Positions 15,601-42,464 of a DNA stretch of 64,000 nucleotides are shown here, piece by piece (position 1 is the first letter of the stretch; the number at the start of each line of letters is the position of its first letter). The translations under genes were made by a program, and so were the position numbers. Location of the stretch: contig OZ281498.1 in the NCBI GenBank assembly GCA_965637545.1, forward strand, positions 9,052,001 through 9,116,000. Direction: 5' to 3'. The DNA is from Phallusia mammillata (taxonomy: Eukaryota). The notes below the pieces were generated by a model that searched no databases, had not been told where the DNA came from, and was given only the letters and a program-made list of their open reading frames with translations.

Positions 15601-16252
15601 ATGACATCAGCTACGTTAGTTAACGCTGCAAACATATAACACTTCTGTAATTGCAAGGCCGCATGCGTTGCGTTAACTTTGCTTAGAGTCATGAGACAAA
15701 AAGGAAAAGTTAGATGGTTTTGTTTTGGGTTTTATGTGTTTTGTCTGTTTTGCGCGTCTAGGATCTTGTTGCAGCTTTATTGAATTTGGATATTTTATGC
15801 AGCAAAATGTTTTGGATATTTTATTGAATTTGGCAGTTGTGCAACAGAGTTGCGAACTAATGGCCTGTTTCAAAGTATACGAGCACAAAATAACAGTCTT
15901 TTCTGCGTGGTTTGGTGAAATACATGCAATGCATTATGCGACATGGACTCGGTTGAAATGTTCAGCCGAAAGGGTAACATCGATTTCCCGCCGACTCAGG
16001 CGACAATTTAACGGGGATCAAACATAGAACAGAGCGCTTGTTTTAGTCACAAAGTCGATATCCCACAACCGAATTGCCTGCTGAGAGAAAAGTATTCGAT
16101 CAACTTGAAATTGCTCATCAACTTTCTTGACGCTTCTCTATAATTTTTACTGCCTTTTCTGACTCCGTTTTGCAAAAAATGGCAGCAAGACGAACTATGC
16201 TAGTAATTGCGACGGAAAACAATTCAACAATGGTGATCGACTCTTACAGAAC

Positions 16253-16581
16253 CAGGGTTGTCAGTGGGGCCGGGCTTTTCGGGCCGGGTTTGGGCTTAGG
16301 TTTCTTAAAAACGGGCCTGATTCGGGCTTGACTTTACACTATGAATCAGAATTCTTTTGAATAAATTTAACTAGCTAAGTAGCCAGTTGCTGGACCAGGC
16401 CTCATTTCAACAGCCCTAAAACACCTTGTTTAAGACCAATTGTCTATTGTGTTTGTTGGTCTTTCCTGAGGCTTCAATGTATAAGCCTGTCAATCAAACT
16501 TTCGGGCCTAAACGGGCTTCTCAAAAACGATTCAGGTTCGGGCCGGGTTCGAGTTCAATTTCAGGCCCATTTACAACTTTG
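16253..16581. mobile_element. hAT MITE with CGGG-rich subterminal repeats
   Basis: Termini CAGGGTTGTCA...TTACAACTTTG; flanks TACAGAAC / TACAGAAA (7/8 TSD). Partial right-end copies of the same family at ~34190-34274 and ~55187-55308. Confidence 0.8.
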
Positions 16582-17793
16582 TACAGAAATATTACAAGAC
16601 CAGAGTCACAGTATAGCGACCGGTACATGTTTACTCAATGTACGTTGAAGTATGGATCTTTCGGTTTATTGTACGCGCTAATAAACATAAAAGTCAAACG
16701 CGTCAGAAAAGAAGAAAAAATATCGAAGTTTAAACACACGTTCGTGGTTGCTTGATGTCGGTACCATAAAGGTAAAAAAATGGCGCCTGTAGGTTTGTGG
16801 AAGTGCGTTTTTTCCTCGCGCTCGAGGCCTTTTGATGAGTTCTGCGGCATTGCACGCCCTGAACAGTGGGTAACTAGACGTCGAGTAAGTTCTGCTGGGT
16901 AAAAGGCAAGCAAGGAATACAAAAACATATTTCAACTTTTGGATTGTTTAAGGTTTATTAAGAGTAGAAAAGTTTGTCTTGGATGTTGGCAGATGTTGAA
17001 AATATAGTCCAAGCCAGTAGTTCGTAAATCAGAGGCAGGATCTGTAAATCGCCATGGTGGACCGTCCAAAGCTAGTGTGTTAGTACAATGCTAATTTACA
17101 TGATATTAACTTTGTAAGCGTAATTTATTTTGGAGTGAGGACCAGTCGCCTGTGCCAACTAATGCATCTTTTGTTCTTTGTTTTGTGTAATTGTTTCAAA
17201 CGGCTTAGTATTTTAATATTACATTCTTGGCGTTGCTTTAAACCAGGTTCGTACGTTTGATAGGTTGCTGAATACGAGTTTAAAATCTTTTGCCAACTAA
17301 TCATTCCAATTTTTAACACAGTATGAGAGGAGTGAAAACGGCTACGTGTTTTCTGTTGGCGTCGAAATAACTTGATTTAGATTCGAGAGTAATTTTTAGA
17401 CTACATAATTAAATGAAGAGCATATAATGGCATATAATGTGTACATGCATCTGCTACCATAACATTATTTGATTATTGTGTTTTTTGACATAATATTACG
17501 TAAATTCTCATGGAGATTTTGTCAGCATGCAGTAGTCTAGAAACTACGCAAGACAAAATAAAAATGCGGTTTAAATGAAGTAGTGATTATGGTTGAAAGG
17601 TTGAACACGAAGTAACTTGGTAGTTTCTAGGCTATGTTGAATATGAAGTAAGATTTTTCACTTGCCTCAACGCACCTGTGCTGTGCTGTGGTGAAGCATT
17701 GACCGCGGCGAAGAGGTTGTGTGTTTGCGCTGAATGTCTACGCAATGTGTCGAGGTGGGTAGACTTAAACGGCGATCTGTGCTCGCTTTAGGA

Positions 17794-18013
17794 AAAGGTG
17801 CTCAACCTTTTCGCTATGACGGCCGCATCGCTGATACTTATGTCGCCAACGGCCGCTTAGTGTTTGCTTGTTTTTGTTTTAATATTACTGACGACTAACT
17901 GCGCCTGAAAAGTCCAGAATAATATTACTGATATACCATCTAATTGCGCCTGAAAAGTTCAGATTAATTCTAAGTAGATGTATACATCGAGCAAAACAGG
18001 TTGTGCACCCCTG
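17794..18013. mobile_element. hAT MITE (left TIR degenerate)
   Basis: AAAGGTGCTCAACC...GGTTGTGCACCCCTG; 8-bp TSD CTTTAGGA; related left end at ~60723. Confidence 0.75.
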
Positions 18014-18045
18014 CTTTAGGACGTTGCGTTGGGGAAGTAGGAGGG

Positions 18046-18503
18046 CAGTGGTTCTTAACCTTTTTGGTGCGGTTTCCCATTAAAGTAAATCACCAAGTTC
18101 AAATTTCCCCCTCTGTTATTTTTATAATAATGTTTTGTGCCAAACATTAACAAAAAAATTATTCTTTGATCGAAATAATTTTGTGAAGCGATTTGGTCGG
18201 GACCTTAAAGGTATACTGCGATTTTATTTAGTTTGATTAGTGATTTCTTGAGAAAGTAATATCGTGTGGAATTTTGAAAAATCTCAGGTGCTTGCATTAG
18301 TCATTTATTGCATCACAATCAACAGATCAAATGCATTTTTTCGCGAACAATAATAAAGTCATTGATACTTGTATTAAATTAACTTTCAATGATTAATTTC
18401 AACCCACGGGCCCGAGTTTGTTGACTTCTGATTCACATAATTTCCCTCTAAAACCATTAAATTTCCCACTAGTGGGAAATTTCCCACCGGTTAAGAACCA
18501 CTG
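18046..18503. mobile_element. hAT MITE, 458 bp
   Basis: TIRs CAGTGGTTCTTAACC / GGTTAAGAACCACTG; perfect TSD TAGGAGGG. Confidence 0.93.
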
Positions 18504-18804
18504 TAGGAGGGGAAGGAGGTGGACTTAAACGTCGATCGGTGCTCGCTTTGCGAGTTTGTGTGTTTGAGCTGAATGTCTACGCAATGTGTCGTATATTGCA
18601 GAATCGAGGGGAAGAAGGGAGACTGGAAAGTCGATCGGTGCTCGCTTTGCGAGTTTGCGTGTTTGATACATGACCTAATTGGACGATGTAATTGTGTTGA
18701 TACATGATGTCCTAAATTAAATTGTATATTATGTGTTTTGTTGTGCAGACTGCGTTAGCAAGACAGAGTAATTTTCAAATGTTGTTTATCGTACTACAGC
18801 TAAA

Positions 18805-19011
18805 ATGAACAGGGGTAACAGTAATGACACTGTGTTGGACGAATTTTACGAATCAAATGGATTCTCCCGCACTCTTCGTGTCTGGACAGTTGTAATGGAA
18901 AACGGAAGCCTTCAACGCCGAGAAGAACTTCGCGCGTTCGTGGATCATGAGATTTGCACTTACGCTGGACAACCTCTCTGCAGTCCTACAGGAGACGAGA
19001 TTTCGGAGTAA
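18805..19011 (+). CDS. Uncharacterised 68-aa acidic microprotein, paralog 1
   Basis: MNRGNSNDTVLDEFYESNGFSRTLRVWTVVMENGSLQRREELRAFVDHEICTYAGQPLCSPTGDEISE; AAAATG start context; colinear without indels with the copies at 31531 and 42258, with many third-position changes. Confidence 0.75.
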   Translation: MNRGNSNDTVLDEFYESNGFSRTLRVWTVVMENGSLQRREELRAFVDHEICTYAGQPLCSPTGDEISE

Positions 19012-21639
19012 ATGTGAAAAAATGTGGACTTGTGGTGCTGAGAAACAATGTTATTGGGAAGATTAACTTGTATAGTCAATTAGTTTTTAGCCATTCCATT
19101 CCACAAAGTTCATATTAGAAACAATGAATGAGTTTAAAACTTTTGTTTTTAGAAGTTCAACTTTTACAATTTACTCTTTTTGACTTGTTCCAAATATGTC
19201 GGTTAGTTTAATTTCTTTACTGTACCCGTCCTTGTTATTGATCTTAAAAACACGTTTTTCCAAACCCCTTTATTCTTCATTTATTTAGTTTCTTTTGTGT
19301 ATGTCTATTGACCCCGTCCCCGCTTCATGACTATGTTGTTGTGTTACAAACAACACACGAGGCACGCGCGCACTGTGCCCATTTACACACACGCATGCAC
19401 ACTTTTTTTCATTTTTTGACTAGTATGGAGTTGCATAATGTGATACATGATAATAAAAACTACGATGTCAAGTAGGAATGGACCGAATCAGCTAAATTTG
19501 GGTTTGGCACAAACCGAATATTGGGCTCGTTTGACATAAAACATAAGTTTTTCTACCAGGTTAACATTGGTGCTACACAACATAGGATAATTGTGTTTTA
19601 TCATCTTAGCTACTTTACTTAGCTAAACTTTAACTTACAACCAGATATTAACAAACACCAGGCACAAGGGGTATTAGCTTAAACATGCTGCTTTGAATTT
19701 GAATAAATTGTGCTTTCTGGCGATTGTTCTGGCGATTGTTTTTTTTTTGTGATTTCGAGGGCAAGTTGTGCATTTAATTTACCACAGGGGTGACTGAACA
19801 AGACTATGTGGAGCGACGGACAGTACCATTCTAATACAACGGTAACAAGCTTCTATAAACTTGTTTCGCTTTCACGCCTTCTATACCAACTGCGAAGTTT
19901 TTGTAACTTTTCATTTGGTAAATCTAGTGTAACTCTGTGTAAAATGTATACACTTCCCTTCTGCCGAACCCCTTTGTTCCCAATTCGAATGACAAAAGAA
20001 GGCAGTTGTTTGCGCATAATTGTAGTATAATCTTCTCAAATTTTCCTCAGACTAACTAGATGCCTGCATTTTGCTGTAAGAATTAAATTGGGTTTTGACT
20101 GTTACCTAAAGCTTTCGTGTTGCTGACTAAATCTAACTGCCCATCTCTGCTCAAGAGGCAGGAACTTTCATACAAAAAAAATTCTCATAGAGCGAGATTT
20201 CGATCGCTTTCTTACCGAAAACAGCTGCATGTTGTAACATGCTTATTTTTCAAGCATTAGTTGTGACGTCACCATGAAAAAGTTACTGAAGTTAAAAGTG
20301 TTTTCTCGCCAAATAGTCATGATATGTATCGCTGCGTGTAGAGTTTAATTCCTGTTCACGGGAGAGCGCTTTCACAAAAACGGGCACCACCAAACAAACA
20401 CCCCGAACTGGGCGCGACCAAACAACAACCCTCGCAGGTTACTTGTCACGTGGTCCAGTTGACAGAAAAAAAGAGCGAGGCGCACCCTTGTCTCTTCTTT
20501 CTCTCTGCTCTTTTCTTTGTTAGGATCCGCCAATGATCACTTGGAGGTGATTGAAAAAAAAACGAAATTTTCTTTTTCGCAAAAGCTTCAAAGGAAATTG
20601 ATAATGGCTGTGCACAGCAGGAAATAATACATACACTACGATTCGCACGAGAAGTTATGAGTGAGTTGAAGTTATGGCTTACTTCAAATCATGTTCATCT
20701 GTTTTCTTAAAATATTTACCTTTTGTTTTTGAGAACAGTTATTTAACTTGTGCGGTGAAAATTAGCAGCTGGAAAAACATTAGCAGTTTTAGAAAAGTAA
20801 AGTTTATCTCCCATCGACATTTACGTGGGGTTAGGTTTTCGCAATGTTTGTTGAACTTTTGACGAGCCGCACTTATTTAAAAATTAGGGCAGCTGTGCGT
20901 CTCACCGTAGGTTATTGTATAAAATGGATCGCTTTTTCATCAAAAATAGTTGCGTGTTATTACATGCTTATTTTTCACGCAGTGAATTTGAGCTAAAAGA
21001 TAAAGCGATTGTGTTGAACCTGAAAGTCCCTGGTTAAACTTAAGTGGCCTTTTAATCACAGTGACAAAAATGGCAGACTTACTGGATGAAATCGTGTGTT
21101 GTATTTTTTTCCTCCAAAATTTGTTTCAGAATCGAACGGTTGTGTTGTTATCTTGAAAATTTAAGCTCCGTTTATTTATTTGTTTATTATATTGCAGAAA
21201 ATACGAAATATAAAAACATATTAGAGATGTTTAAATTGATAAGTCGGAGACGTGTTTTTGACTAAATAATCAGAGCTGAGCTTCCGTATTTCTATTTCAC
21301 CAGATCCTCAATTGTTTTATATTAATTGATTTCTTCATGTTTTGACAATATCAGGTTAGAAAAATATTCCAGAAAAAAAACTTAGACTTTTTTGTATGCT
21401 AAGGTTTTGATCGCAAATATTTCGTATCCCAAAGTGATTAGAGCTGTTTATTGGAAACGGAAAAGTAGAAGCGGTACAGGCTAGCAGCAGCAATTATGGG
21501 TTGTCATCAACCGGGGATTTCCCATTTTATGCCAAAAGAGAAAATCAGCTGATTTCCTTTTCAACGATACCCGCGCGGAAAGAAGAGATTAAGGCGACCT
21601 TCTGAGATTCAACGCATCATGTCAAGACTCAATGGTGGT

Positions 21640-23660
21640 AGTGGCTGGTGTAGACAGAGTCGTCGATCGCTGCTCGCTTTAGCGCCTGGTATGTTTGACT
21701 TCTACGCATCGTGTCGAGGCGCAATGGTCGTGGTTTGGGTAGACTGGGTCGTCGATCACTGCTCGCTTTCGAACGTCGTGTCTTTGCCTCACTTCTTCGC
21801 ACAGCGTCGGGGCGAAATAGTCGTTGTTTGGGTAGACTGGGTGGTCGATCGCTCCTCGCTTTAGCGCCTGGTCTGTTTGACTTCTACGCATCGTGTCGAG
21901 ACGCAATGGTTGTGGCTGTGGTAGACTGAGTCGACGATCTCTGCTCGCCAAAAGTCTATTGGCCCATGTTTATCGTCTTTAAAAAGTGCTGAAATTGAAC
22001 ACATTAGGGCAATTGGGGTTGTGGAAAAGGTTTGCATTTCCACGTGATAATTTACCACAAAAACATGTTTTTGAAAATGCATTGTTTCTTTTTTGGGAAA
22101 ACAACGAAACAAAACAAACGAATTTGAACATTAACACCAGGAATCGAAATAAAGAAAGATCGTAAAATCACCAGATGTAATTTAATGCAAGTTTAGAATA
22201 TTACTTCTAGTGATTGTCCTGTAACTTTGGCATCCGTTCGTACTTCGCAGCAAGTCAAGGCAAAATGCCGTGATGTCGACCGTTACTCTAAGCGTGCCAC
22301 TGTGAGACAACAAAGGAAAGAAGGCAAGGAAAAAAAGGCAAAAGATTGCAAATATAACAATACTATATGACGAGTAATGACCAAAGAGGTGCTGGGTAAA
22401 TTCGAAGAGAAAGGAATAGAAAGGAAATGAGGTTTAGCGCAGGTCGTGGTTTGGGCAGATTGGGTCTACGATCGCTGCTCGCTTTAGCGCCTGGTATGTT
22501 TGACTTCTACGCATCGTGTCGAGGCGCAATGGTCGTGGTTTGGGCAGACTGGGTCTACGATCGCTGCTCGCTTTTTAAACGTTGTGTGTTTGCTTGACTT
22601 CTACGCATCGTGTCGAGGCACAATGGTCTTGGCTGAGGTAGACTGGGCCGTCGATCGCTGCTCGCTTTAGCGCCTGGTATATTTGACTTCTACGCATCGT
22701 GTCGAGGCGCAATGGTCGTGGTTTGGGCAGACTGGGTCTACGATCGCTGCTCGCTTTTTAAACGTTGTGTGTTTGCTTGACTTCTACGCATCGTGTCGAG
22801 GCACAATGGTCTTGGCTGAGGTAGTCTGGGCCGTCGATCGCTGCTCGCTTTAGCGCCTGGTATGTTTGACTTCTACGCATCGTGTCGAGGCGCAATGGTC
22901 GTGGTTTGGGTAGACTGAGTCGTCGATCGCTGCTCGCTTTCGAACGTCGTGTCTTTGCCTGACTTCTTCGCACAGCGTCGGGGCGAAATAGTCGTGGTTT
23001 GGGTAGACTGGGTGGTCGATCGCTGCTCGCTTTAGCGCCTGGTCTGTTTGACTTCTACGCATCGTGTCGAGGCGCAATGGTTGTGGCTGTGGTAGACTGA
23101 GTCGTCGATTGCTGCTCGCCAAAAGTCTATTGGCCCATGTTTATCGTCTTTAAAAAGTGCTGAAATTGAACACAATAGGGCAATTGGGGTTGTGGAAAAG
23201 GTTTGCATTTCCACGTGATAATTTACCACAAAAACATGTTTTTTGAAACTACATGAGAAATTGCGTTGTTTCTTATTTGACAAATCAACGAGAGAAAAAA
23301 ACGAATTTGAACATTAACATCTAAGAATCGGAATAAACAAATATCGTAAATCACCAGATGTAATTCAATATAGGTTTTGAAAATTACTTCCAAGTGACTG
23401 TCCGATGACTTTGCATCCTTACGTACTTCGTAGCAAATCAAGGCAAAATGCCGTAATGTCAACCGTTACTCTAAGCGTGCCACTGTGAGACAACGAAGGA
23501 AAAAAAGCAAGGAAAAGAAAAAGGCAAAAGATTGTGAATATAACAATGCGATATGGAGAGTATTGACCAGAGAGGTGTTGGGTAAAATCGAAGAGAAAGG
23601 AAAGGAAAAGAAAAGGAAGGAAAGGAAAGGAAAGGAAAGGAGGTTTAGCGCAGGTAACGT
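21640..23660 (+). repeat. Tandem segmental duplication (period 1171 bp) of satellite monomers plus an AT-rich spacer
   Basis: 21679->22850 and 21861->23032 are both offset by 1171; spacer 21950-22440 is homologous to 23121-23650. Confidence 0.9.
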
Positions 23661-23715
23661 TCATGAACAAAGATAGTTTCGGAGGAGAATATTTGGCGGC
23701 GCGCAAGAGGAACGT

Positions 23716-26700
23716 CGATCGCTGCTCGCTTTAGCGCCTGGTATGTTTGACTTCTACGCATCGTGTCGAGGCACAATGGTCTTGGCTGGGGTAGACTGAG
23801 TCGTCGATCGCTGCTCGTTTTAGCGCCTGGTATGTTTGACTTCTACGCATCGTGTCGAGGCACAATGGTCTTGGCTAGGGTAGACTGAGTCGTCGGTCGC
23901 TGCTCGTTGTAGCGCCTGGTATGTTTGACTTCTACGCGTCGTGTCGAGGGGCATTAGTCGTGGCTGGGGTAGACTGGGCCGTCGATCGCTGCTCGCTTTC
24001 GAACCTTGTGTGTTTGCTTGACTTCTACGCATCATATCGCGGCGCAATAGTCGTGGCTGGGGTAGACTGGGCCGTCGATCGCTGCTCGCTTTCGAACCTT
24101 GTGTGTTTGCTTGACTTCTACGCATCATATCGCGGCGCAATAGTCGTGGCTGGGGTAGACTGGGCCGTCGATCGCTGCTCGCTTTAGCGCCTGGTATGTT
24201 TGACTTCTACGCATCGTGTCGAGGCGCAATGGTCGTGGTTTGGGCAGATTGGGTCTACGATCGCTGCTCGCTTTAGCGCCTGGTATGTTTGACTTCTACG
24301 CATCGTGTCGAGGCGCAATGGTCGTGGTTTGGGCAGACTGGACGGCGATCGCTGCTCGCTTTCGAACCTTGTGTGTTTGCTTGACTTCTACGCATCATAT
24401 CGCGGCGCAATGGTCGTGGCTGGGGTAGACTGGGTGGTCGATCGCTGCTCGCTTTCGAACCTTGTGTGTTTGCTTGACTTCTACGCATCATATCGCGGCG
24501 CAATAGTCGTGGCTGGGGTAGACTGGGCCGTCGATCGCTGCTCGCTTTCGAACCTTGTGTGTTTGCTTGACTTCGACGCATCATATCGCGGCGCAATAGT
24601 CGTGGCTGGGGTAGACTGGGCCGTCGATCGCTGCTCGCTTTCGAACCTTGTGTGTTTGCTTGACTTCTACGCATCATATCGCGGCGCAATAGTCGTGGCT
24701 GGGGTAGACTGGGCCGTCGATCGCTGCTCGCTTTCGAACCTTGTGTGTTTGCTTGACTTCTACGCATCATATCGCGGCGCAATAGTCGTGGATGGGGTAG
24801 ACTGTGCCGTCGATCGCTGCTCGCTTTCGAACCTTGTGTGTTTGCTTGACTTCTACGCATCATATCGCGGCGCAATAGTCGTGGCTGGGGTAGACTGGGC
24901 CGTCGATCGCTGCTCGCTTTCGAACCTTGTGTGTTTGCTTGACTTCTACGCATCATATCGCGGCGCAATAGTCGTGGCTGGGGTAGACTGGGCCGTCGAT
25001 CGCTGCTCGCTTTCGAACCTTGTGTGTTTGCTTGACTTCTACGCATCATATCGCGGCGCAATAGTCGTGGCTGGGGTAGACTGGGCCGTCGATCGCTTCT
25101 CGCTTTCGAACCTTGTGTGTTTGCTTGACTTCTACGCATCATATCGCGGCGCAATAGTCGTGGCTGGGGTAGACTGGGCCGTCGATCGCTGCTCGCTTTA
25201 GCGCCTGGTATGTTTGACTTCTACGCATCGTGTCGAGGCGCAATGGTCGTGGTTTGGGCAGACTGGGCCGTCGATCGCTGCTCGCTTTCGAACCTTGTGT
25301 GTTTGCTTGACTTCTACGCATCATATCGCGGCGCAATGGTCGTGGCTGGGGTAGACTGGGCCGTCGATCGCTGCTCGCTTTCGAACCTTGTGTGTTTGCT
25401 TGACTTCTACGCATCATATCGCGGCGCAATAGTCGTGGCTGGGGTAGACTGGGCCGTCGATCGCTGCTCGCTTTCGAACCTTGTGTGTTTGCTTGACTTC
25501 TACGCATCATATCGCGGCGCAATAGTCGTGGCTGGGGTAGACTGGGCCGTCGATCGCTGCTCGCTTTCGAACCTTGTGTGTTTGCTTGACTTCTACGCAT
25601 CATATCGCGGCGCAATAGTCGTGGCTGGGGTAGACTGGGCCGTCGATCGCTGCTCGCTTTAGCGCCTGGTATGTTTGACTTCTACGCATCGTGTCGAGGC
25701 GCAATAGTCGTGGCTGGGGTAGACTGGGCCGTCGATCGCTGCTCGCTTTCGAACCTTGTGTGTTTGCTTGACTTCTACGCATCATATCGCGGCGCAATAG
25801 TCGTGGCTGGGGTAGACTGGGCCGTCGATCGCTGCTCGCTTTCGAACCTTGTGTGTTTGCTTGACTTCTACGCATCATATCGCGGCGCAATAGTCGTGGC
25901 TGGGGTAGACTGGGCCGTCGATCGCTTCTCGCTTTCGAACCTTGTGTGTTTGCTTGACTTCTACGCATCATATCGCGGCGCAATAGTCGTGGCTGGGGTA
26001 GACTGGGCCGTCGATCGCTGCTCGCTTTAGCGCCTGGTATGTTTGACTTCTACGCATCGTGTCGAGGCGCAATGGTCGTGGTTTGGGCAGACTGGGCCGT
26101 CGATCGCTGCTCGCTTTCGAACCTTGTGTGTTTGCTTGACTTCTACGCATCATATCGCGGCGCAATGGTCGTGGCTGGGGTAGACTGGGTGGTCGATCGC
26201 TGCTCGCTTTCGAACCTTGTGTGTTTGCTTGACTTCTACGCATCATATCGCGGCGCAATAGTCGTGGCTGGGGTAGACTGGGCCGTCGATCGCTGCTCGC
26301 TTTCGAACCTTGTGTGTTTGCTTGACTTCTACGCATCATATCGCGGCGCAATAGTCGTGGCTGGGGTAGACTGGGCCGTCGATCGCTGCTCGCTTTCGAA
26401 CCTTGTGTGTTTGCTTGACTTCTACGCATCATATCGCGGCGCAATAGTCGTGGCTGGGGTAGACTGGGCCGTCGATCGCTGCTCGCTTTAGCGCCTGGTA
26501 TGTTTGACTTCTACGCATCGTGTCGAGGCGCAATGGTCGTGGTTTGGGCAGATTGGGTCTACGATCGCTGCTCGCTTTAGCGCCTGGTATGTTTGACTTC
26601 TACGCATCGTGTCGAGGCGCAATGGTCGTGGTTTGGGCAGACTGGACGGCGATCGCTGCTCGCTTTCGAACCTTGTGTGTTTGCTTGACTTCTACGCATC

Positions 26701-29700
26701 ATATCGCGGCGCAATGGTCGTGGCTGGGGTAGACTGGGTGGTCGATCGCTGCTCGCTTTCGAACCTTGTGTGTTTGCTTGACTTCTACGCATCATATCGC
26801 GGCGCAATAGTCGTGGCTGGGGTAGACTGGGCCGTCGATCGCTGCTCGCTTTCGAACCTTGTGTGTTTGCTTGACTTCGACGCATCATATCGCGGCGCAA
26901 TAGTCGTGGCTGGGGTAGACTGGGCCGTCGATCGCTGCTCGCTTTCGAACCTTGTGTGTTTGCTTGACTTCTACGCATCATATCGCGGCGCAATAGTCGT
27001 GGCTGGGGTAGACTGGGCCGTCGATCGCTGCTCGCTTTCGAACCTTGTGTGTTTGCTTGACTTCTACGCATCATATCGCGGCGCAATAGTCGTGGCTGGG
27101 GTAGACTGGGCCGTCGATCGCTGCTCGCTTTAGCGCCTGGTATGTTTGACTTCTACGCATCGTGTCGAGGCGCAATGGTCGTGGTTTGGGCAGATTGGGT
27201 CTACGATCGCTGCTCGCTTTAGCGCCTGGTATGTTTGACTTCTACGCATCGTGTCGAGGCGCAATGGTCGTGGTTTGGGCAGACTGGACGGCGATCGCTG
27301 CTCGCTTTCGAACCTTGTGTGTTTGCTTGACTTCTACGCATCATATCGCGGCGCAATGGTCGTGGCTGGGGTAGACTGGGTGGTCGATCGCTGCTCGCTT
27401 TCGAACCTTGTGTGTTTGCTTGACTTCTACGCATCATATCGCGGCGCAATAGTCGTGGCTGGGGTAGACTGGGCCGTCGATCGCTGCTCGCTTTCGAACC
27501 TTGTGTGTTTGCTTGACTTCGACGCATCATATCGCGGCGCAATAGTCGTGGCTGGGGTAGACTGGGCCGTCGATCGCTGCTCGCTTTCGAACCTTGTGTG
27601 TTTGCTTGACTTCTACGCATCATATCGCGGCGCAATAGTCGTGGCTGGGGTAGACTGGGCCGTCGATCGCTGCTCGCTTTCGAACCTTGTGTGTTTGCTT
27701 GACTTCTACGCATCATATCGCGGCGCAATAGTCGTGGATGGGGTAGACTGTGCCGTCGATCGCTGCTCGCTTTCGAACCTTGTGTGTTTGCTTGACTTCT
27801 ACGCATCATATCGCGGCGCAATAGTCGTGGCTGGGGTAGACTGGGCCGTCGATCGCTGCTCGCTTTCGAACCTTGTGTGTTTGCTTGACTTCTACGCATC
27901 ATATCGCGGCGCAATAGTCGTGGCTGGGGTAGACTGGGCCGTCGATCGCTGCTCGCTTTCGAACCTTGTGTGTTTGCTTGACTTCTACGCATCATATCGC
28001 GGCGCAATAGTCGTGGCTGGGGTAGACTGGGCCGTCGATCGCTTCTCGCTTTCGAACCTTGTGTGTTTGCTTGACTTCTACGCATCATATCGCGGCGCAA
28101 TAGTCGTGGCTGGGGTAGACTGGGCCGTCGATCGCTGCTCGCTTTAGCGCCTGGTATGTTTGACTTCTACGCATCGTGTCGAGGCGCAATGGTCGTGGTT
28201 TGGGCAGACTGGGCCGTCGATCGCTGCTCGCTTTCGAACCTTGTGTGTTTGCTTGACTTCTACGCATCATATCGCGGCGCAATGGTCGTGGCTGGGGTAG
28301 ACTGGGCCGTCGATCGCTGCTCGCTTTCGAACCTTGTGTGTTTGCTTGACTTCTACGCATCATATCGCGGCGCAATAGTCGTGGCTGGGGTAGACTGGGC
28401 CGTCGATCGCTGCTCGCTTTCGAACCTTGTGTGTTTGCTTGACTTCTACGCATCATATCGCGGCGCAATAGTCGTGGCTGGGGTAGACTGGGCCGTCGAT
28501 CGCTGCTCGCTTTCGAACCTTGTGTGTTTGCTTGACTTCTACGCATCATATCGCGGCGCAATAGTCGTGGCTGGGGTAGACTGGGCCGTCGATCGCTGCT
28601 CGCTTTAGCGCCTGGTATGTTTGACTTCTACGCATCGTGTCGAGGCGCAATAGTCGTGGCTGGGGTAGACTGGGCCGTCGATCGCTGCTCGCTTTCGAAC
28701 CTTGTGTGTTTGCTTGACTTCTACGCATCATATCGCGGCGCAATAGTCGTGGCTGGGGTAGACTGGGCCGTCGATCGCTGCTCGCTTTCGAACCTTGTGT
28801 GTTTGCTTGACTTCTACGCATCATATCGCGGCGCAATAGTCGTGGCTGGGGTAGACTGGGCCGTCGATCGCTTCTCGCTTTCGAACCTTGTGTGTTTGCT
28901 TGACTTCTACGCATCATATCGCGGCGCAATAGTCGTGGCTGGGGTAGACTGGGCCGTCGATCGCTGCTCGCTTTAGCGCCTGGTATGTTTGACTTCTACG
29001 CATCGTGTCGAGGCGCAATGGTCGTGGTTTGGGCAGACTGGGCCGTCGATCGCTGCTCGCTTTCGAACCTTGTGTGTTTGCTTGACTTCTACGCATCATA
29101 TCGCGGCGCAATGGTCGTGGCTGGGGTAGACTGGGCCGTCGATCGCTGCTCGCTTTCGAACCTTGTGTGTATGTTTGACTTCTACGCGTCGTGTCGAGGG
29201 GCATTAGTCGTGGCTGGGGTAGACTGGGCCGTCGATCGCTGCTCGCTTTCGAACCTTGTGTGTTTGCTTGACTTCTACGCATCATATCGCGGCGCAATAG
29301 TCGTGGCTGGGGTAGACTGGGCCGTCGATCGCTGCTCGCTTTCGAACCTTGTGTGTTTGCTTGACTTCTACGCATCATATCGCGGCGCAATAGTCGTGGC
29401 TGGGGTAGACTGGGCCGTCGATCGCTGCTCGCTTTAGCGCCTGGTATGTTTGACTTCTACGCATCGTGTCGAGGCGCAATGGTCGTGGTTTGGGCAGATT
29501 GGGTCTACGATCGCTGCTCGCTTTAGCGCCTGGTATGTTTGACTTCTACGCATCGTGTCGAGGCGCAATGGTCGTGGTTTGGGCAGACTGGACGGCGATC
29601 GCTGCTCGCTTTCGAACCTTGTGTGTTTGCTTGACTTCTACGCATCATATCGCGGCGCAATGGTCGTGGCTGGGGTAGACTGGGCCGTCGATCGCTGCTC

Positions 29701-31200
29701 GCTTTCGAACCTTGTGTGTTTGCTTGACTTCTACGCATCATATCGCGGCGCAATAGTCGTGGCTGGGGTAGACTGGGCCGTCGATCGCTGCTCGCTTTCG
29801 AACCTTGTGTGTTTGCTTGACTTCGACGCATCATATCGCGGCGCAATAGTCGTGGCTGGGGTAGACTGGGCCGTCGATCGCTGCTCGCTTTCGAACCTTG
29901 TGTGTTTGCTTGACTTCTACGCATCATATCGCGGCGCAATAGTCGTGGCTGGGGTAGACTGGGCCGTCGATCGCTGCTCGCTTTCGAACCTTGTGTGTTT
30001 GCTTGACTTCTACGCATCATATCGCGGCGCAATAGTCGTGGATGGGGTAGACTGTGCCGTCGATCGCTGCTCGCTTTCGAACCTTGTGTGTTTGCTTGAC
30101 TTCTACGCATCATATCGCGGCGCAATAGTCGTGGCTGGGGTAGACTGGGCCGTCGATCGCTGCTCGCTTTCGAACCTTGTGTGTTTGCTTGACTTCTACG
30201 CATCATATCGCGGCGCAATAGTCGTGGCTGGGGTAGACTGGGCCGTCGATCGCTGCTCGCTTTCGAACCTTGTGTGTTTGCTTGACTTCTACGCATCATA
30301 TCGCGGCGCAATAGTCGTGGCTGGGGTAGACTGGGCCGTCGATCGCTTCTCGCTTTCGAACCTTGTGTGTTTGCTTGACTTCTACGCATCATATCGCGGC
30401 GCAATAGTCGTGGCTGGGGTAGACTGGGCCGTCGATCGCTGCTCGCTTTAGCGCCTGGTATGTTTGACTTCTACGCATCGTGTCGAGGCGCAATGGTCGT
30501 GGTTTGGGCAGACTGGGCCGTCGATCGCTGCTCGCTTTCGAACCTTGTGTGTTTGCTTGACTTCTACGCATCATATCGCGGCGCAATGGTCGTGGCTGGG
30601 GTAGACTGGGCCGTCGATCGCTGCTCGCTTTCGAACCTTGTGTGTTTGCTTGACTTCTACGCATCATATCGCGGCGCAATAGTCGTGGCTGGGGTAGACT
30701 GGGCCGTCGATCGCTGCTCGCTTTCGAACCTTGTGTGTTTGCTTGACTTCTACGCATCATATCGCGGCGCAATAGTCGTGGCTGGGGTAGACTGGGCCGT
30801 CGATCGCTGCTCGCTTTCGAACCTTGTGTGTTTGCTTGACTTCTACGCATCATATCGCGGCGCAATGGTCGTGGCTGGGGTAGACTGGGCCGTCGATCGC
30901 TGCTCGCTTTCGAACCTTGTGTGTTTGCTTGACTTCTAATCATCATATCGCGGCGCAATAGTCGTGGCTGGGGTAGACTGGGCCGTCGATCGCTGCTCGC
31001 TTTCGAACCTTGTGTGTTTGCTTGACTTCTTTGCATATCGTCGAGAAGCAGTAGTCGTGGCTGTTGTAGACTGGGCGGTCGCTTTCGAATCTTGCGTGTT
31101 TGCACTGACTTTTGCGCATCATGTCGAGGCGCAGTAGACTGGGTCGTCGATCGCTGCTCGCTTTTAAACGTGGTGTGTTTGCACTAAATTCTAGGCATCA
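23716..31200 (+). repeat. CpG-rich satellite array (93-bp A and 88/89-bp B monomers) with a 2304-bp higher-order repeat
   Basis: A monomer TCGAACCTTGTGTGTTTGCTTGACTTCTACGCATCATATCGCGGCGCAATAGTCGTGGCTGGGGTAGACTGGGCCGTCGATCGCTGCTCGCTT; B monomer starts TAGCGCCTGGTATG; HOR starts at 24185, 26489 (partial, 642 bp), 27131 and 29435. Confidence 0.97.
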
Positions 31201-31530
31201 TGTCGAGGCAAACGAAGTATGGATTAGATGTTGTTTCGCTGAACATTCGTATGTTGGACAGGACGTTGTTTTGCATTGTAGAAAAGCTGAAACTCATTTT
31301 AAGTCGAAAATGAAAACGGCTCGACAAATACTACTGCGTTTCAGTGACGGCGTTGATGCATCGTTGACATGCCTTTGGTTAATAAGTTATAGTGTGTTAT
31401 CTTAAACGTTACTTCTGAATTGATGATTGGTGTTTTTCTTGTATAGGTTGCACCAAATGCTAAAGCAAGACAGCGAATTAGTTAAATATTTCAAATTTTC
31501 GCTTCAGTCTTGAGTTTTTCCGCACTTAAA

Positions 31531-31737
31531 ATGGATGGGGATGACGGTAATGACATTCTGTTGGAAGAATCGTACGAATCTGATGGATTTTTCCGCACTA
31601 TTCGGGTGTGGACAGTTGTAATAGAAAATGGAACCCTTCAACGCCATGAAGAACTTCGCGCATTCGTTGACCAAGATACATTTACATATGCTGGTCAACC
31701 ACTCTGCTGTCCTACTGGAGATGAGATTGCCGAATAG
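31531..31737 (+). CDS. Uncharacterised 68-aa acidic microprotein, paralog 2
   Basis: MDGDDGNDILLEESYESDGFFRTIRVWTVVIENGTLQRHEELRAFVDQDTFTYAGQPLCCPTGDEIAE; AAAATG start at 31531 (the TTG at 31510 in the ORF track is probably UTR); 57/68 identical to paralog 3. Confidence 0.8.
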   Translation: MDGDDGNDILLEESYESDGFFRTIRVWTVVIENGTLQRHEELRAFVDQDTFTYAGQPLCCPTGDEIAE

Positions 31738-34529
31738 ACTGAAAAAATTGGGATCCGTTCTGGTGCTGAGAAACAATCGCAGAGAAAGATTTAATTGTAA
31801 TCATTTTTTGCAAACGCCATTCCATTAAGTTCACCTTCAAAACAATGACTGGGGTTGAAACTGTTGTTTTCAAAAGGTCAACAATTCGAAATTTATTTAA
31901 TTTTTAACCTTTATCCCAGATCTGCCGACCGTGTTCGATTTTTTTCAAAACCTGTCTGTGCTTCATTGATTTTTTGTGTATTTTTTTCCATGTTCCAAAG
32001 GGACTGCAGCTGCTTGAAGCGATTTTTCACCAATGATGAAGTTCCAATTGTATGTTTGTATGGTCGCTGAAAGCTAATTAATGTACGTGGTAGCGCATTG
32101 TGTAAGTTTATTTATGCGAATGTCAAATTTTTACAGACATTAATTGAATCTCTATTATCATCATTTTTATTTCTTCACCAATCATCTTTAGATTGGATGA
32201 AACAATGTTATATATCCATTCTTAAATTGCTATCTATGTCAAGCATTTTTCCCTCCTCATCACTCTTGGAGTTGTGAAATTTACCAAGTGCTATAACGTA
32301 GTTGCCTGGTTTTCTCAACTTTTTTCAAAATTTCCAGCTTGAATTTGTATTTGATGCTTGCGTAACATGGATTGTGCGTTGGTTTTAGGAATGTATATTG
32401 ATAGTAAAGCTGTTCTACAAACATTCCAAGTAATCTAATATTGTATAAAATGAGTTTTATATTTTATGAAATATTTGGTATGAAGTTTCATAGATGAATT
32501 AACTACAAGGCATTTAATAAGAAGACAGTTTTATGGATTTTTAGCCTGATTATTATTTTTTAAATATTTTGCTGTTTGTCATGTACAAAATGTTGCTTTG
32601 TTCTTTTAGTGCTTCATAATACAACATTGCTGTTTTAAAACGCGTGATAAGCATTTTAAAACAAGCACTAAGAGTCATGAGAGATTCACAGCACGTGTCG
32701 TTGCATTTTTGAACTTCTATCAATTTTATGTTACAATATACACGTTTTTAAATGGTTACAAACACAGATATTGGTGCTTTGATTATTATTTTACAATTTA
32801 AAGCCTTAAGCGACAAACTTTTCGTTTTACAACCGATACGTTTGCATTATTTTGCCATGTCCAACGCAAAAACAAACATTTTTGGCACATAGAAATGTAG
32901 CATAACTAATCGAATGAAAAAACTCTTGAATTTGTGATCATGTGATTTTTTTGCTTCCACTTGCTAAGTGGAAGCTACCAACGTGAGAACTCAATTCACA
33001 AAAGATTGCGAAGTACCCATAGGTGGCGCAAAGAGCATTACGAATAAAAACAAAATTGTGTGAAAATGCTGACGGTAAGTATGCGGGTTGGGGTGATGTT
33101 ATACAAAAAAAGTAACATTAAAACTTACATAAAACTTGGTTCCTAACGTTTAATTTATTTTCTGAAGCTGAAACAATTGTACGCTTTTTACGCCCTCTAT
33201 CGGAATTTATCAAAATTTTCTGATTTTAGATCCAATTTTAATAGTACTGAGTAAAATTGGTTGACAAAACTCGTGTTACGTTCTTTGTCAATACGCGTCC
33301 TCAGACAAGACAAACTTCCTGGTTTCACACCTGGCCTGGCCTTGCCCGCTGGTTGGCTTGCTCGTAATTTAAAGAAATGTTCAGCAAAAAGTTATTGATC
33401 GACGCCAAAGTTTTTTAACTAAGTAATACAGACATTACTGTCGTCTACTAGGATGCTGGTCACGTGAGCGCTGTGGTCAATCAGAGACGACAATTTAGTT
33501 CCAGGTGAGGTGGTGACGTAAAGTAAAGTCCATCGCACATACAACATAAATAATAAACTACCAATTAGCATTTTTAAACGATCGATATTTTATTTGCTGA
33601 GTACCCATCAGTAAATTTACTCCCATTGCGTGATAATTGTCAATACCATCGTTGTGGTGTTCATAGCGCAGTGCACTGCAAGTAAATGTCTTTCACTACA
33701 GTGTGTGTATTTCAACACAAGTTGTTGAAGCATCAGCATAAAGCCGATAAACATAAAACGAAAAACCTTTTATAGCACAAAATTCTTGGAACGGAATTCA
33801 TACACACACAGAAGGACACTAAGTTATCGGCAGGCGCATAACTGGATACAGAAAAAAATATCACTTAAAAATCAATTAACTTTGAACAACCAGAATAACA
33901 AAAGCAGGTGCTTAGAAATAATATCGCTGTCAAGAGTCAATATGGTAATACATTATTCCAAAATTTACTGTACATTTTATGTGCTTTAATAATTAAATTT
34001 TAAAATCTTCTAAAACAAGAATCATAGCCGTAAAATACAAAACATCTTGTTTCAGGTACCAGTTTTTTTTAGCGGGGACCACGCAGAATAAAGCTTTTAC
34101 ATCCGACCAAATTGTGTTTGTGGTACTCCATTTTTCTCCTAACATCCAGAGGCGCAGTTGAAAAGTTGGCAAACACCCACCTGTCTCGGGCGGAGCGGAG
34201 TTCCAGTAAGCGATCGGGACCGACCGAGTTCGGGCCGGGTTCGGGCTCCAATTTCAAGCCTGTTTACAACTCTGATCCGACAAAATTGTGTCACTCCATC
34301 AAGATTTTGGTGTAACACAAGCCAACTCAACCCAAAACGAGTTATATATAGCGAACTGCCAGTGTGACGGAACGGGCTTGCTCTGTTTAAACAAAAGATC
34401 CTCACAGGCTGGAGGAGCGAAGATTTAGTTTCTTTTTGAGCGTTACTTTTTTCTTTGCAGTCGGTCTGTAGTTCAGATTGCGCTCGAGTCTTGTCCAAAT
34501 GGTTCGAGTTCTGCTGACAAGAAGCAGCA

Positions 34530-35400
34530 TTAGTTTGCTAAAACGACGGCTAGGCTATTCTACACAAAGGCTAGTTTTCGTATTTTATTGAAGTAAGTAT
34601 TAAAATATTTATACTTTTCTGTATGGTTGGGTTATAGTTGCAATTTTTTTTATCCCAAAATGATTGAAGCTGTTCACGGGAATGTATAAATAGAAAAGAG
34701 AAGTCAGCTGTGCAACAGCAAAATGTAAAATGTTCATTGCAGTATGATCGTGTGGGGCAGGGCCAGTGTTTAGTTATGTTATTTTAAGCTCTTTTAGGAC
34801 AATTGCACGGCTTTAGCATCACGCCGACATCGACTCGATTTAAACTACATTCGGGGCAATATTGGCGTCGAGTTCCCGTGAGCACATAGCTTGTTTCATC
34901 ATATGTTACTAAGCAAGTAGCGTCGCTGAGTACAAAGGTAGCGACGGTTGTGAGGTTTGATATGTGGCATCTTTCTAAGTCAGCATTGAGGCTTCTGCGA
35001 TACATAAAACATTTTCGCGGCACCTAACACTATCAACAGGCCGATTCAGTTAAGCCTAAATAAACGCTTGGATTTAGATCTGAATTAACACTCCGCCAAA
35101 TTTGTCCTCTAATTTTACGAGAGTAAATCAAACATTATTGGTCATTATCCTTTTGTTCTTCTCGTTGGCCGTTGGTTGGTGTCAACACACGTAAAAATGT
35201 ATTGAAGCGACAATGAACAACCACCGATACTTTCACTAATGAGCTGTGCAGCGCTTTTTGGAAATCAGTAGAAGCCTACCTAACGTATCCTAAAATGCAT
35301 TTAAGTTGTTAACCAACACAATTTTTGCCCCAACTTGCGATTTGCTGGCGGTCGCGCTTTAGGCTAGATCCACACACACGCTCGCGCGCCAGCGCACAGT
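34530..35400. repeat. Dispersed duplicated block, homologous to 38130-39080 and more weakly to ~6550-6970
   Basis: Shared blocks include AAAATATTTATACTTTTCTGTATGG, GCAATATTGGCGTCGA.TTCCCG, TGGCATCTTTCTAAGTCAGC and TGTGCAGCGCTTTTT(T)GGAAATCAGT. Confidence 0.8.
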
Positions 35401-38129: not shown

Positions 38130-39080
38130 TTTATGGTGCTGACTCAGCAGTTTCGTATTTTTTTGAAATAAGTAATAAAATATTTATACTTTTCTGTATG
38201 GCTGAGTTATAGTCGCATTTTTTTGGTCTCAAAATGAATGGAGCTGTTTTGGGAATTGCATAAGTAAAAAAAGGAAGTGAATTCGTTACCAAAAAAATAA
38301 AAGGGCATTCCAATACGATTGTGCAGGGCAGGGCCGGTGTTTAGTTTTTTGTTTACAGATTGGCCGAGATGTGACCTCTAGTACAAAAAAACTATTATAT
38401 TTAAATTTGTTCCGTGCATTGTTAATGACTGTGCCAACAATGTTATTTTAGGAGAAAAAAACGCAGAGCATCAGACAGATTTAGACTTGATTCGGACCAT
38501 TGCATCCGCAATATTGGCGTCGAATTCCCGCCTTGAGCCAGGGGGAAAGATATAAAGGTTGTGGTGAATTTAAGTTTTTAATATCTGGCATCTTTCTAAG
38601 TCAGCGGTGAGGCTTCTGCGACACATAAAATATTTTCGCGGACCAAAATCTAAACAGGTCGGACTAAGCCTATATAAACGCGCTTGGATTTAAATCCGAA
38701 TTGACACTCGGCTTAATTTATCTCCAAATTTTATGAGAGTTAATAAAAGAGATCGGTCATTACCCTTTTGCTCTTTTCGTCGGCCTTTGGTTGGTGTCCA
38801 CACACGTTAATGTATTAAAGCGACGATGGCAGCCACCAACAGTTTCATTAAAAACCTGTGCAGCGCTTTTTTGGAAATCAGTGGAAGGTTGCCGGACGTG
38901 TCCTCAAATGCTTTCAAGTTGTTAGCCATGATAGTTTTTGACCCACAAGCGATTTCCAACGCGAGACGCCTGTACGCAAGAGCACTCCGGAGAAAAAAGT
39001 GACAATGTGTGTGTTGGAGCGGCCTGAGAAAATGGGGCTTTCCCGGTGGAAATTTGCAAATGTGTTGTCAAGGCTCGTCT
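38130..39080. repeat. Dispersed duplicated block (partner of 34530-35400)
   Basis: Colinear similarity with indels; the 3' part GCACTCCGGAGA..TGTGTGT..GGAAATT also matches 6875-6950. Confidence 0.8.
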
Positions 39081-39830: not shown

Positions 39831-40619
39831 CTTTCCGATCAGTTCGACCAGGGCGACACCGTAGGGAGATTGAGAAGCACTATGACCTCTTTTTTATTTG
39901 ACTTTTTCGCGTCCTTCGGTCGCGAACCCTTCGGTCGCCGTTGGAGAGAATATGATGTTTTTCTATTTTTGCATTGTGTTTCTTCGTACCGCTCGTTTAT
40001 TAGCGCACAATCAACAAAAAATGCCGTTAGAATAGATATGTTGGAATAACGCGGGGAAACATTTGTGTTAATTTACTGTAAAGGTTGTAGGTCGCGATTT
40101 GTCGACTGCGGGGCGCATTTTGCACAGGGTTAACAGCTTTGCTGCTAAACAAAATCGTGGAATAACACATTTCTGATGGTTAACTGTAAAGATCAAAAAT
40201 GTAAGCTGAAATGTAGCGATGGTGTTGGGCAGTAACTGGCCATTTAATCCACAGGGAGAGAAAACTGTGAGAGATTGTATGTTGTATTAGTTTGTGCTGC
40301 AGAATTTGTTTTAGAATCGATCGACTTTGTTGTTATCTTCTAAACTTTGGCTGTGTTTAATTATTTGTTGTATCCCGGAATAGTCACAGTTTAACAAATC
40401 AAATGTCAGAGAGACCTGTTTGTGAAGAAATATTTGGAGTTTTTTCTATTCCAACAAATCATTTTCTGTTCAAATCCAGTTGTTTGTTAACTAAATCTTT
40501 TGACAATTTTAGGTTGGAAAAGTAGTTTATTGCTAAATACAACCCAGTTCACCGTGTTTCCGTCAGGATTAACAGTTTCAACCCAACATGCGATAACACA
40601 TTAGTTAGAAATTCCGCGG

Positions 40620-40880
40620 CTATAACAAAGTGGTGTTTCGAAATAGCCTGACTTACACGCGTCGAGGCGCAATTGTTGTGACTGGATAGGTTGGGTTGCC
40701 GATTGCTGCTCGCTTAGCGCTTTGTGTGTTTGTATTGACTGAAATGCCGCGGCTCTAACGAAGTGGTGTTTCGAAATGACCTGACTTCCACGCGTCGAGG
40801 CGCAATTGCTGCGACTGGATAGGTTGGGTCGCCGATTGCTGCTCGCTTAGCGCTTTGTGTGTTTGTACTGACTGACTTCT
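40620..40880 (+). repeat. Two tandem degenerate satellite-family monomers (~115-bp period)
   Basis: TGACTT.CACGCGTCGAGGCGCAATTG.TG.GACTGGATAGGTTGGGT.GCCGATTGCTGCTCGCTTAGCGCTTTGTGTGTTTGTA occurs twice; homologous to the array monomer. Confidence 0.8.
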
Positions 40881-40943
40881 ACATATTGTGCGGACGTAAC
40901 TGCTGATGGGCATGTAAATGCGACCAACTTATGAACAGGGAGT

Positions 40944-42257: not shown

Positions 42258-42464
42258 ATGAACGAGGATGACGGTAATGACATTGTGCTGGAAGAATCGT
42301 ACGAAGCTGATGGATTTTTCCGCACTCTTCGTGTTTGGACAATAATGACCGAAAATGGATGCCTGCAACGCCGTGAAGAACTCCGCGCATTCGTGGATCA
42401 AGACACATTTACATATGCTGGGCAACCACTCTGCTGCCCGACAGGCGACGAGATTGACGAATAG
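42258..42464 (+). CDS. Uncharacterised 68-aa acidic microprotein, paralog 3
   Basis: MNEDDGNDIVLEESYEADGFFRTLRVWTIMTENGCLQRREELRAFVDQDTFTYAGQPLCCPTGDEIDE; the in-frame TGA at 42237 upstream makes ATG 42258 the likely start. Confidence 0.8.
   Translation: MNEDDGNDIVLEESYEADGFFRTLRVWTIMTENGCLQRREELRAFVDQDTFTYAGQPLCCPTGDEIDE

What the first reader, a model, noticed from the sequence alone, without database searches (positions are those of the whole stretch)
24185..31100. Alpha-satellite-style higher-order repeat: a 25-monomer, 2304-bp unit
Seen: the unit B-B'-A9-B-A4-B-A3-B-A4 (89+88+837+89+372+89+279+89+372 = 2304 bp) occurs at 24185 and 27131. A 642-bp partial (B-B'-A5) lies at 26489 and a truncated copy at 29435. 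Position-specific variants recur in register: CTTCGACG in A3 (24571/26876/27517/29821), GATGGGGTAGACTGTGCC in A5, and CGCTTCTC in A8. The A monomer holds 10 CpG per 93 bp in an AT-rich, gene-containing region. Established: HORs arise by unequal crossing-over or replication-based amplification and typify centromeric satellites. Finding one small and gene-adjacent is unusual.
Basis: seen in the sequence. Interest (0 to 1): 0.7.

Follow-up and report, generated by a model that had tools for sequence, protein, structure and literature searches.

The report
Gene-front repeat array, not centromere satellite
The patterned 93/89-letter repeat is real, but it exists at only this one place in a sea-squirt genome, just in front of a small expressed gene, so it is an ordinary single-locus repeat array rather than centromere-type satellite DNA.

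Summary
The main array (23716-31210) has 80 monomers of 93 bp (A), 89 bp (B) and 88 bp (B'). A 25-monomer, 2304-bp unit occurs twice (10 differences), with a 642-bp partial copy and a truncated third copy. The named in-register variants are all present.

The alpha-satellite comparison does not hold. All 88 genome-wide matches to the monomer core lie in this one 9.6-kb locus of a 240-Mb genome. The A monomers are 97-100% identical to each other. CpG richness mostly reflects 56% GC.

The new point is the context. The array ends 236 bp upstream of the trans-splice acceptor of an expressed gene. An RNA contig carries the ascidian spliced leader joined at 31446/31447. The gene encodes a 68-aa orphan protein under purifying selection. 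It has two paralogs in the window, and each has 2-4 diverged relic monomers upstream.

The array is therefore a roughly 25-fold local expansion of an ancestral upstream element, probably by unequal exchange and gene conversion. A cis-regulatory role is only inferred. Exact copy number and order could not be checked, because only short-read contigs were served. Depth suggests tens of copies in one data set and far fewer in another individual.

The scan had noted only this same stretch before, not on other DNA.

The parts
21608..21948 (+). Older upstream array 1, about 3.8 monomers of 89/93 bp
   Evidence: TRF. Direct-repeat families D1, D2 and D4.
21949..22441 (+). Spacer 1, non-repetitive. It is duplicated as spacer 2.
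   Evidence: 86% identical to 23120-23613.
22442..23119 (+). Older upstream array 2. It consists of 89+94-bp dimers with a 183-bp period, about 3.6 dimers.
   Evidence: TRF gives 92% matches at period 183 against 79% at period 89. 22807-23106 is 95% identical to 21636-21935.
23120..23715 (+). Spacer 2, which includes a (GAAAG)n run at 23595-23641
23716..31210 (+). Main array: 80 regular monomers (62 A of 93 bp, 14 B of 89 bp, 4 B' of 88 bp) in only 16 distinct sequences, followed by about 2.5 degenerate terminal monomers from 30987
24169..26472 (+).
26473..27114 (+). Partial unit B B' A5, 642 bp. It equals the first six monomers of the unit plus one final A, as a single unequal exchange between identical A monomers would leave.
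   Evidence: 2 differences from unit 1.
27115..29418 (+). Higher-order unit 2, with 10 differences from unit 1. Eight of them lie in one hybrid monomer at 29140-29232, whose core matches the B-type monomer at 23894.
29419..30986 (+). Truncated unit 3. It stays in register with units 1 and 2 for about 15 monomers.
31445..31446 (+). AG of the spliced-leader trans-splice acceptor. The exon starts at 31447.
   Evidence: An RNA contig from run X6 has 22 loose letters before 31445. They end in the first 14 of the 16 spliced-leader letters, and the final AG overlaps the genomic AG. They are preceded by letters I recognise as the end of a template-switch oligo. A contig from run X7 starts at 31446.
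31447..32857 (+). Intron-less mRNA of the middle paralog. The shorter contig ends at 32416.
   Evidence: RNA contigs from X6 and X7 are colinear with the genome and show no joints.
31531..31737 (+). Coding sequence of a 68-aa orphan protein, including the stop codon
   Evidence: ORF. dN/dS is 0.15-0.22 against the paralogs. No Pfam match and no homologue.
17680..17865 (+). Relic monomers, distal cluster, upstream of paralog 1
18507..18700 (+). Relic monomers, proximal cluster (two copies 99 bp apart). They end about 80 bp before paralog 1's predicted acceptor.
18805..19011 (+). Paralog 1 coding sequence
40567..40930 (+). Relic monomers upstream of paralog 3: about 2.7 copies of a 133-bp version carrying a 40-bp insertion
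42258..42464 (+). Paralog 3 coding sequence

Best explanation
This is a young, single-locus minisatellite in the upstream (promoter/outron) region of the middle member of a three-gene tandem family encoding a 68-aa orphan protein. The ancestral gene unit already carried 2-4 copies of an element of about 90 bp upstream, and all three paralogs still show it. In the middle paralog the element expanded in stages. First an 'array plus spacer' block of about 1.18 kb was duplicated (86-95% identity). Then the third array expanded by repeated unequal exchange or replication slippage between near-identical A monomers, with occasional gene conversion. This produced nested duplications of 0.83, 2.3 and 2.9 kb that are 99.6-100% identical. 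On this reading the 25-monomer higher-order unit records that amplification history and is not a functional unit. What is shown: the structure, its restriction to one locus, its homology to the paralogs' upstream relics, and expression with spliced-leader trans-splicing 236 bp downstream. What is inferred: that the monomer is a promoter-proximal cis-regulatory module, so the array multiplies binding sites upstream of the gene, and that copy number varies between individuals.
For: The array and its monomer order are established. The monomer is specific to this locus: all 27 BLAST places and all 88 pattern matches in the 240-Mb genome lie at C5:9073697-9083135, with none on the reverse strand and none for the control pattern. 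There are three copies of the small ORF in the genome, all in this window and all on the + strand. They show dN/dS 0.15-0.22 and dS 0.56-0.85. Relic monomers lie upstream of each paralog and are 62-82% identical to array monomers in local alignments. A flanking block (21115-21366 against 40300-40524, 61% identical) brackets the array on one side and paralog 3's 0.36-kb relic on the other. The gene is expressed: RNA contigs from two studies cover 31446-32416 and 31445-32857, and one carries the spliced leader at its 5' end. The same 16-mer plus GT occurs 3179 times in this genome, including a 553-bp tandem array. It is the Ciona spliced leader (PMC1488885). In paralog 1 the relic monomers end only about 80 bp before the conserved acceptor, so the core promoter probably overlaps them. 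The sequence between monomers and acceptor does not align between paralogs, whereas the monomers do. Summed word depth in the array is 20-110 times single-copy depth in X1 and 1-11 times in X3. X3 also lacks 177 bp (the length of B+B') at the array's end.
Against: No transcription start site, chromatin or reporter data exist, so the regulatory role is only an inference. Paralog 3's relics lie 1.2 kb from its acceptor, so proximity is not constant. The monomers are no better conserved between paralogs (about 72-76%) than the mRNA's non-coding part (71%), so special constraint is not demonstrated. Depths of short-read contigs are poor copy-number measures. Exact copy number and order rest on the assembly alone. 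One RNA run (X7) holds a 123-nt array contig, but a trace of genomic DNA from a 60-copy repeat would give the same result.
Confidence: 0.7

Rival explanations
1. The array is a neutral length-variable repeat. It has the same structural origin, but the monomer has no function, and the array simply drifts in size upstream of the gene.
For: The copies are nearly identical and therefore very young. Another individual appears to carry far fewer A-type copies yet expresses... more precisely, the RNA runs carry that individual's variants in the mRNA. Monomer conservation between paralogs is no higher than that of the untranslated mRNA.
Against: Monomer relics remain recognisable upstream of all three paralogs despite dS of 0.56-0.85. 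The sequence between them and the acceptor has diverged beyond alignment.
Confidence: 0.35
2. The higher-order pattern, or its copy number, is an assembly artefact caused by duplication or collapse of a simpler array.
For: Duplicated blocks of 2-3 kb at 99.6-100% identity are hard to assemble. No raw long reads were served.
Against: The copies are not perfect duplicates. They differ at 10 sites, including one hybrid monomer, and the partial differs at 2 sites. Array words stand at 20-110 times single-copy depth in X1, the order expected for 60-90 copies. The A and B monomers and the spacer-B junction are also seen in an independent individual. There are no N's in the window.
Confidence: 0.12
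3. The array is a centromere-type satellite, or the seed of one.
For: A multi-monomer unit is repeated in register. The older array has a 183-bp dimer period, close to nucleosome size.
Against: It is a single 9.6-kb locus and the monomer is absent from the rest of the genome. It lies among expressed genes, with a trans-spliced mRNA 236 bp away and a mitochondrial carrier gene 15 kb downstream. The monomers are near-identical rather than diverged.
Confidence: 0.02
4. The array is the internal tandem repeat of a transposable element, or an array of small-RNA genes.
For: Some transposable elements carry internal satellites. One RNA run holds a 123-nt array contig.
Against: There are no inverted repeats around it and no other copies in the genome. 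There is no Rfam match. Monomers fold no better than shuffled sequence on either strand, with z-scores from 0.0 to +1.2. The 89- and 88-bp monomers break every reading frame, so it is not a coding repeat.
Confidence: 0.05

Closest known systems
Minisatellites / VNTRs with internal variant-repeat patterns, including promoter-proximal ones (reviewed in PMC3899988; minisatellites built from two different units are described in PMC2566889)
   Same: It has a unit of about 90 bp and a locus-specific array of a few kilobases. Two interspersed variant units occur. Growth is by unequal exchange and conversion. There is likely length variation between individuals, and the array lies upstream of a gene.
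   Different: At 80-95 copies with nested 0.8/2.3/2.9-kb duplications it is at the large end of the class. It derives from an element already repeated upstream of the gene's paralogs.
Euchromatic satellite-like tandem repeats near genes (Tribolium Cast families, PMC4675708) and intragenic higher-order repeats (Paar et al. 2011, cited there as reference 19)
   Same: These are tandem arrays with satellite-like organisation outside centromeres, some with higher-order units, and are proposed to modulate nearby genes.
   Different: Those families are dispersed over many loci and chromosomes. This monomer exists at one locus only.
Alpha-satellite higher-order repeats of primate centromeres
   Same: A multi-monomer unit is repeated head to tail at 99.6% or higher identity, presumably by unequal crossing-over.
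   Different: Alpha-satellite monomers within a unit differ by tens of percent (from my own knowledge). Here 37 of 62 A monomers are identical. This array is 7.5 kb rather than megabases, sits at a single locus, and lies beside an expressed gene. Centromere function was not tested.
Enhancer and spacer-promoter repeats of Xenopus and Drosophila rDNA intergenic spacers (from my own knowledge, not checked in a paper here)
   Same: The working analogy is an upstream block made of two interspersed repeat variants of slightly different length, plus duplicated 'array plus spacer' units. The repeats are related to the sequence next to the gene's own start.
   Different: This is not rDNA (no Rfam hit). 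It lies upstream of a small protein-coding, trans-spliced gene, presumably transcribed by Pol II. Enhancer activity has not been shown.

Membership tests
Centromeric alpha-satellite-type higher-order repeat | A multi-monomer unit is repeated in register with very high identity between units | tested here: met
   There are two full 25-monomer units (10 differences in 2304 bp), one partial and one truncated copy.
Centromeric alpha-satellite-type higher-order repeat | Monomers within a unit are clearly diverged from each other, by tens of percent | tested here: not met
   A monomers are 97-100% identical, and 37 of 62 are identical. Only A against B differs, at 78-87% identity.
Centromeric alpha-satellite-type higher-order repeat | Long homogeneous arrays (hundreds of kilobases or more) of a family present at centromeres | tested here: not met
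   The main array is 7.5 kb. All 88 genome matches lie in this single locus.
Centromeric alpha-satellite-type higher-order repeat | Association with centromeric chromatin (CENP-A) | not testable with these tools
   No ChIP data are available. The neighbourhood holds expressed genes.
Minisatellite / VNTR | A unit of roughly 10-100 bp in a tandem array of about 0.5-30 kb | tested here: met
   Units are 88-93 bp. The array is 7.5 kb, or 9.6 kb with the older arrays.
Minisatellite / VNTR | Locus-specific, not dispersed | tested here: met
Minisatellite / VNTR | Copy number varies between individuals | tested here: inconclusive
   The ratio of array depth to single-copy depth is 20-110 in X1 and 1-11 in X3. 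X3 has a 177-bp deletion at the array's end. Contig depths are not copy numbers.
Transposable-element-borne tandem repeat | Terminal repeats or other element parts, and multiple genomic copies | tested here: not met
   There are no inverted repeats in 15000-24000 and no other copies.
Coding tandem repeat (repetitive exon) | A reading frame is kept through the array and the array is included in the mRNA | tested here: not met
   The 89- and 88-bp monomers shift the frame, and ORFs stop at each B. The mRNA's 5' end is the spliced leader joined downstream of the array.
Structured RNA gene array | A match to a known RNA family, or folding better than shuffled sequence | tested here: not met
   There are no Rfam matches. 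Fold z-scores range from 0.0 to +1.2.

The most novel reading that the evidence does not exclude
The monomer is the gene family's own promoter-proximal control element. Its roughly 25-fold amplification in one paralog would create a natural, copy-number-variable super-array of binding sites. That array would tune, or buffer as a factor sink, expression of a lineage-specific small protein. This would be an animal Pol II counterpart of rDNA spacer enhancer repeats, segregating at very different lengths in wild sea squirts.
Probability: 0.2. Interest if true: 0.5.

Novelty: new member of a known kind. Interest (0 to 1): 0.3.

Why it matters
The main value is corrective. The array should not be annotated as satellite or centromeric DNA. 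It is a single-locus repeat that grew from the upstream region of a small gene. It is a clear example of how nested higher-order patterns arise in a few steps of unequal exchange. If copy number does vary widely between individuals, it offers a natural series of alleles for asking whether multiplying an upstream element changes the output of a trans-spliced gene. The 68-aa protein family, which is expressed, conserved and without relatives, is a small annotation gain.

Tried and rejected
- **Reads on the array:** I worked on the part beside it, 30330-33300, as the tool suggested.
- **Homologues of the 68-aa protein:** there was no Pfam match and no word-sharing candidate.
- **Representative-library hits:** the three hits are long repeat proteins (FG-GAP, insect-allergen repeat, WD40). 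These families are unrelated to each other and each match is short and weak. I read them as chance matches amplified by repetition.
- **Atlas neighbours:** the nearest clusters are unnamed bacterial ones at 0.88-0.91 and are uninformative.
- **RNA gene or hairpin array:** rejected.
- **Coding repeat:** rejected.
- **Transposable element:** rejected.
- **CpG-island significance:** weakened, because the flanks already have CpG observed/expected near 1.0 and GpC is equally raised.
- **Literature:** searches found no description of ascidian satellites or centromere repeats to compare with.
- **Transcription-factor motifs:** I noticed forkhead-like and bZIP-like words in the conserved boxes of the monomer. 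No motif library was available, so I make no claim about them.
Full report
**1. The observation**

Tandem Repeats Finder finds a 93-bp period with 80.1 copies at 23713-31081. It also finds related 89/183-bp arrays at 21608-21948 and 22442-23119. GC content rises from about 0.38 to 0.56 across the block.

I anchored each monomer on its conserved start. This gives the following order of lengths: B B B A A | B B' A9 B A4 B A3 B A4 | B B' A5 | B B' A9 B A4 B A3 B A4 | B B' A9 B A5, then degenerate copies.

Self-comparison shows 100% identity per 100-bp window at a lag of 2946 bp from about 23925 to 27150. The same is seen at a lag of 2304 bp over two stretches. Unit 1 (24169-26472) and unit 2 (27115-29418) differ at 10 of 2304 positions. 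The 642-bp partial differs from unit 1 at 2 positions.

The window has no N's.

**2. How it differs from a satellite higher-order repeat**

Of the 62 A monomers, 37 are identical and most others differ by 1-3 bases. A and B are 78-87% identical, and B subtypes are 91-97% identical. The higher-order pattern therefore rests on A/B interspersion and a few single-base markers, not on diverged monomers.

The unit also contains a nested sub-repeat. The run A A A9 B10 A A A A, whose fifth monomer is type A11 in one copy and A6 in the other, occurs twice per unit.

The partial unit equals the first six monomers plus one final A. A single unequal exchange between identical A monomers would leave exactly this. 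One hybrid monomer (29140-29232) carries the core of the B-type monomer at 23894, which looks like gene conversion over 5 kb.

In the whole 240-Mb genome, all 27 BLAST places and all 88 pattern matches (up to 3 mismatches) lie at C5:9073697-9083135. That corresponds to window 21697-31135. All are on the + strand.

CpG observed/expected is 1.38 in the array, against about 1.0 in the flanks. GpC is 1.35. The CpG density therefore mostly reflects GC content in a region that is not CpG-depleted anyway.

**3. The surroundings**

Stop-to-stop ORFs outside the array revealed one small ORF three times on the + strand, at about 18.8, 31.5 and 42.3 kb. These are the only three copies in the genome.

Their alignment shows a conserved pyrimidine tract plus AG about 85 nt upstream of the ATG. 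It also shows a conserved stop codon and conservation continuing downstream. Pairwise dN/dS is 0.15-0.22 with dS 0.56-0.85. The ORF therefore encodes a real, old, small protein of 67-69 aa.

The protein has no Pfam domain and no word-sharing homologue. Its only hits are chance-like matches to unrelated repeat proteins, and the atlas gave no useful neighbour.

Each paralog has diverged copies of the monomer upstream. These lie at 17680-17865 and 18507-18700 for paralog 1, and at 40567-40930 for paralog 3. A block just upstream of the first array (21115-21366) aligns with the block just upstream of paralog 3's relics (40300-40524, 61% identity). The 9.6-kb repeat block of the middle paralog therefore corresponds to about 0.36 kb in paralog 3.

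Within the block, an 'array plus spacer' unit of about 1.18 kb was duplicated earlier. Its spacers are 86% identical and its arrays 95% identical.

**4. Expression**

Only short-read contigs of public runs were served.

A contig from run X6 covers 31445-32857. It carries 22 extra letters at its 5' end. These are the first 14 letters of the 16-nt ascidian spliced leader, and the last AG overlaps the genomic AG. I recognise the letters before them as the end of a template-switch oligo (own knowledge). A contig from run X7, from another study, covers 31446-32416.

The leader is the one described for Ciona (PMC1488885). The leader followed by GT occurs 3179 times in this genome, including a 553-bp tandem array on C3. 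It is therefore this species' own spliced leader.

The gene is thus expressed, intron-less, and trans-spliced at 31446/31447. That is 236 bp after the last degenerate monomer. The transcription start is unknown because trans-splicing removes the outron. In paralog 1 the relic monomers end only about 80 bp before the acceptor.

X7 also holds a 123-nt contig inside the array. A trace of genomic DNA from a 60-copy repeat could give the same result, so transcription of the array is not shown.

**5. Support from DNA runs**

In X1, likely the assembly's source or a close sample, single-copy flanks stand at depth 366. Array bins stand at 7,000-41,000. In X3, another study, the flanks stand at 24 and array bins at 23-263.

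X3 also lacks 177 bp (the length of B+B') near the array's end. Its spacer-to-B junction has a variant sequence.

This fits tens of copies in one sample and far fewer, especially of A-type monomers, in another. However, summed contig depths are poor measures of copy number. Copy number and order in the assembly remain unverified by spanning reads.

**6. Other readings tested**

- There is no Rfam family.
- Monomers fold no better than shuffles on either strand.
- There are no inverted repeats.
- The 89- and 88-bp monomers break every frame.
- Downstream lie a mitochondrial carrier gene (45.9-50.1 kb) and EGF-like exons, so the region is ordinary gene-bearing DNA.

**7. Interpretation**

The array is a locus-specific minisatellite. 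It grew from an ancestral upstream repeated element of a small gene family by stepwise unequal exchange and conversion. The higher-order unit is a record of that history. That the monomer is a promoter-proximal regulatory module is my preferred reading, but it is only an inference.

Gene-near euchromatic tandem repeats and non-centromeric higher-order repeats are already described (PMC4675708, PMC3899988, PMC2566889). This is therefore a new member of a known kind.

I did not test that.

Noticed in passing
window 18805-19011, 31531-31737, 42258-42464 (+): A three-member tandem family encodes a 67-69-aa acidic, cysteine-containing protein. It has no Pfam domain and no detectable homologue. It is under purifying selection (dN/dS 0.15-0.22), and the middle copy is expressed and trans-spliced.
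   Followed up: yes
G000:C3:11108338-11147465 (L041/L042 are other copies, on C1): The 16-nt spliced leader followed by GT occurs 3179 times in the genome. This includes a long tandem array with a 553-bp period on C3, presumably the spliced-leader RNA gene cluster.
   Followed up: partly
window 45865-50138 (+): Four ORF pieces match the mitochondrial carrier family (PF00153). This is a multi-exon carrier gene downstream of the third paralog.
   Followed up: partly
window 54635-54874 and 57465-57686 (+): Two exon-like ORFs give weak EGF-type matches (teneurin/laminin EGF), all below Pfam cut-offs.
   Followed up: no
window 34576-35343 vs 38151-38955: A direct duplication of about 0.8 kb at 77-79% identity, 3.6 kb apart, lies between paralogs 2 and 3. 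Its nature is unknown.
   Followed up: no
window 32264 and ten single-base sites between 31983 and 32754: RNA run X6 and DNA run X3 share the same variants relative to the assembly, including a 6-bp insertion in the 3' untranslated region. They appear to be alleles of another individual or population, not RNA editing.
   Followed up: no
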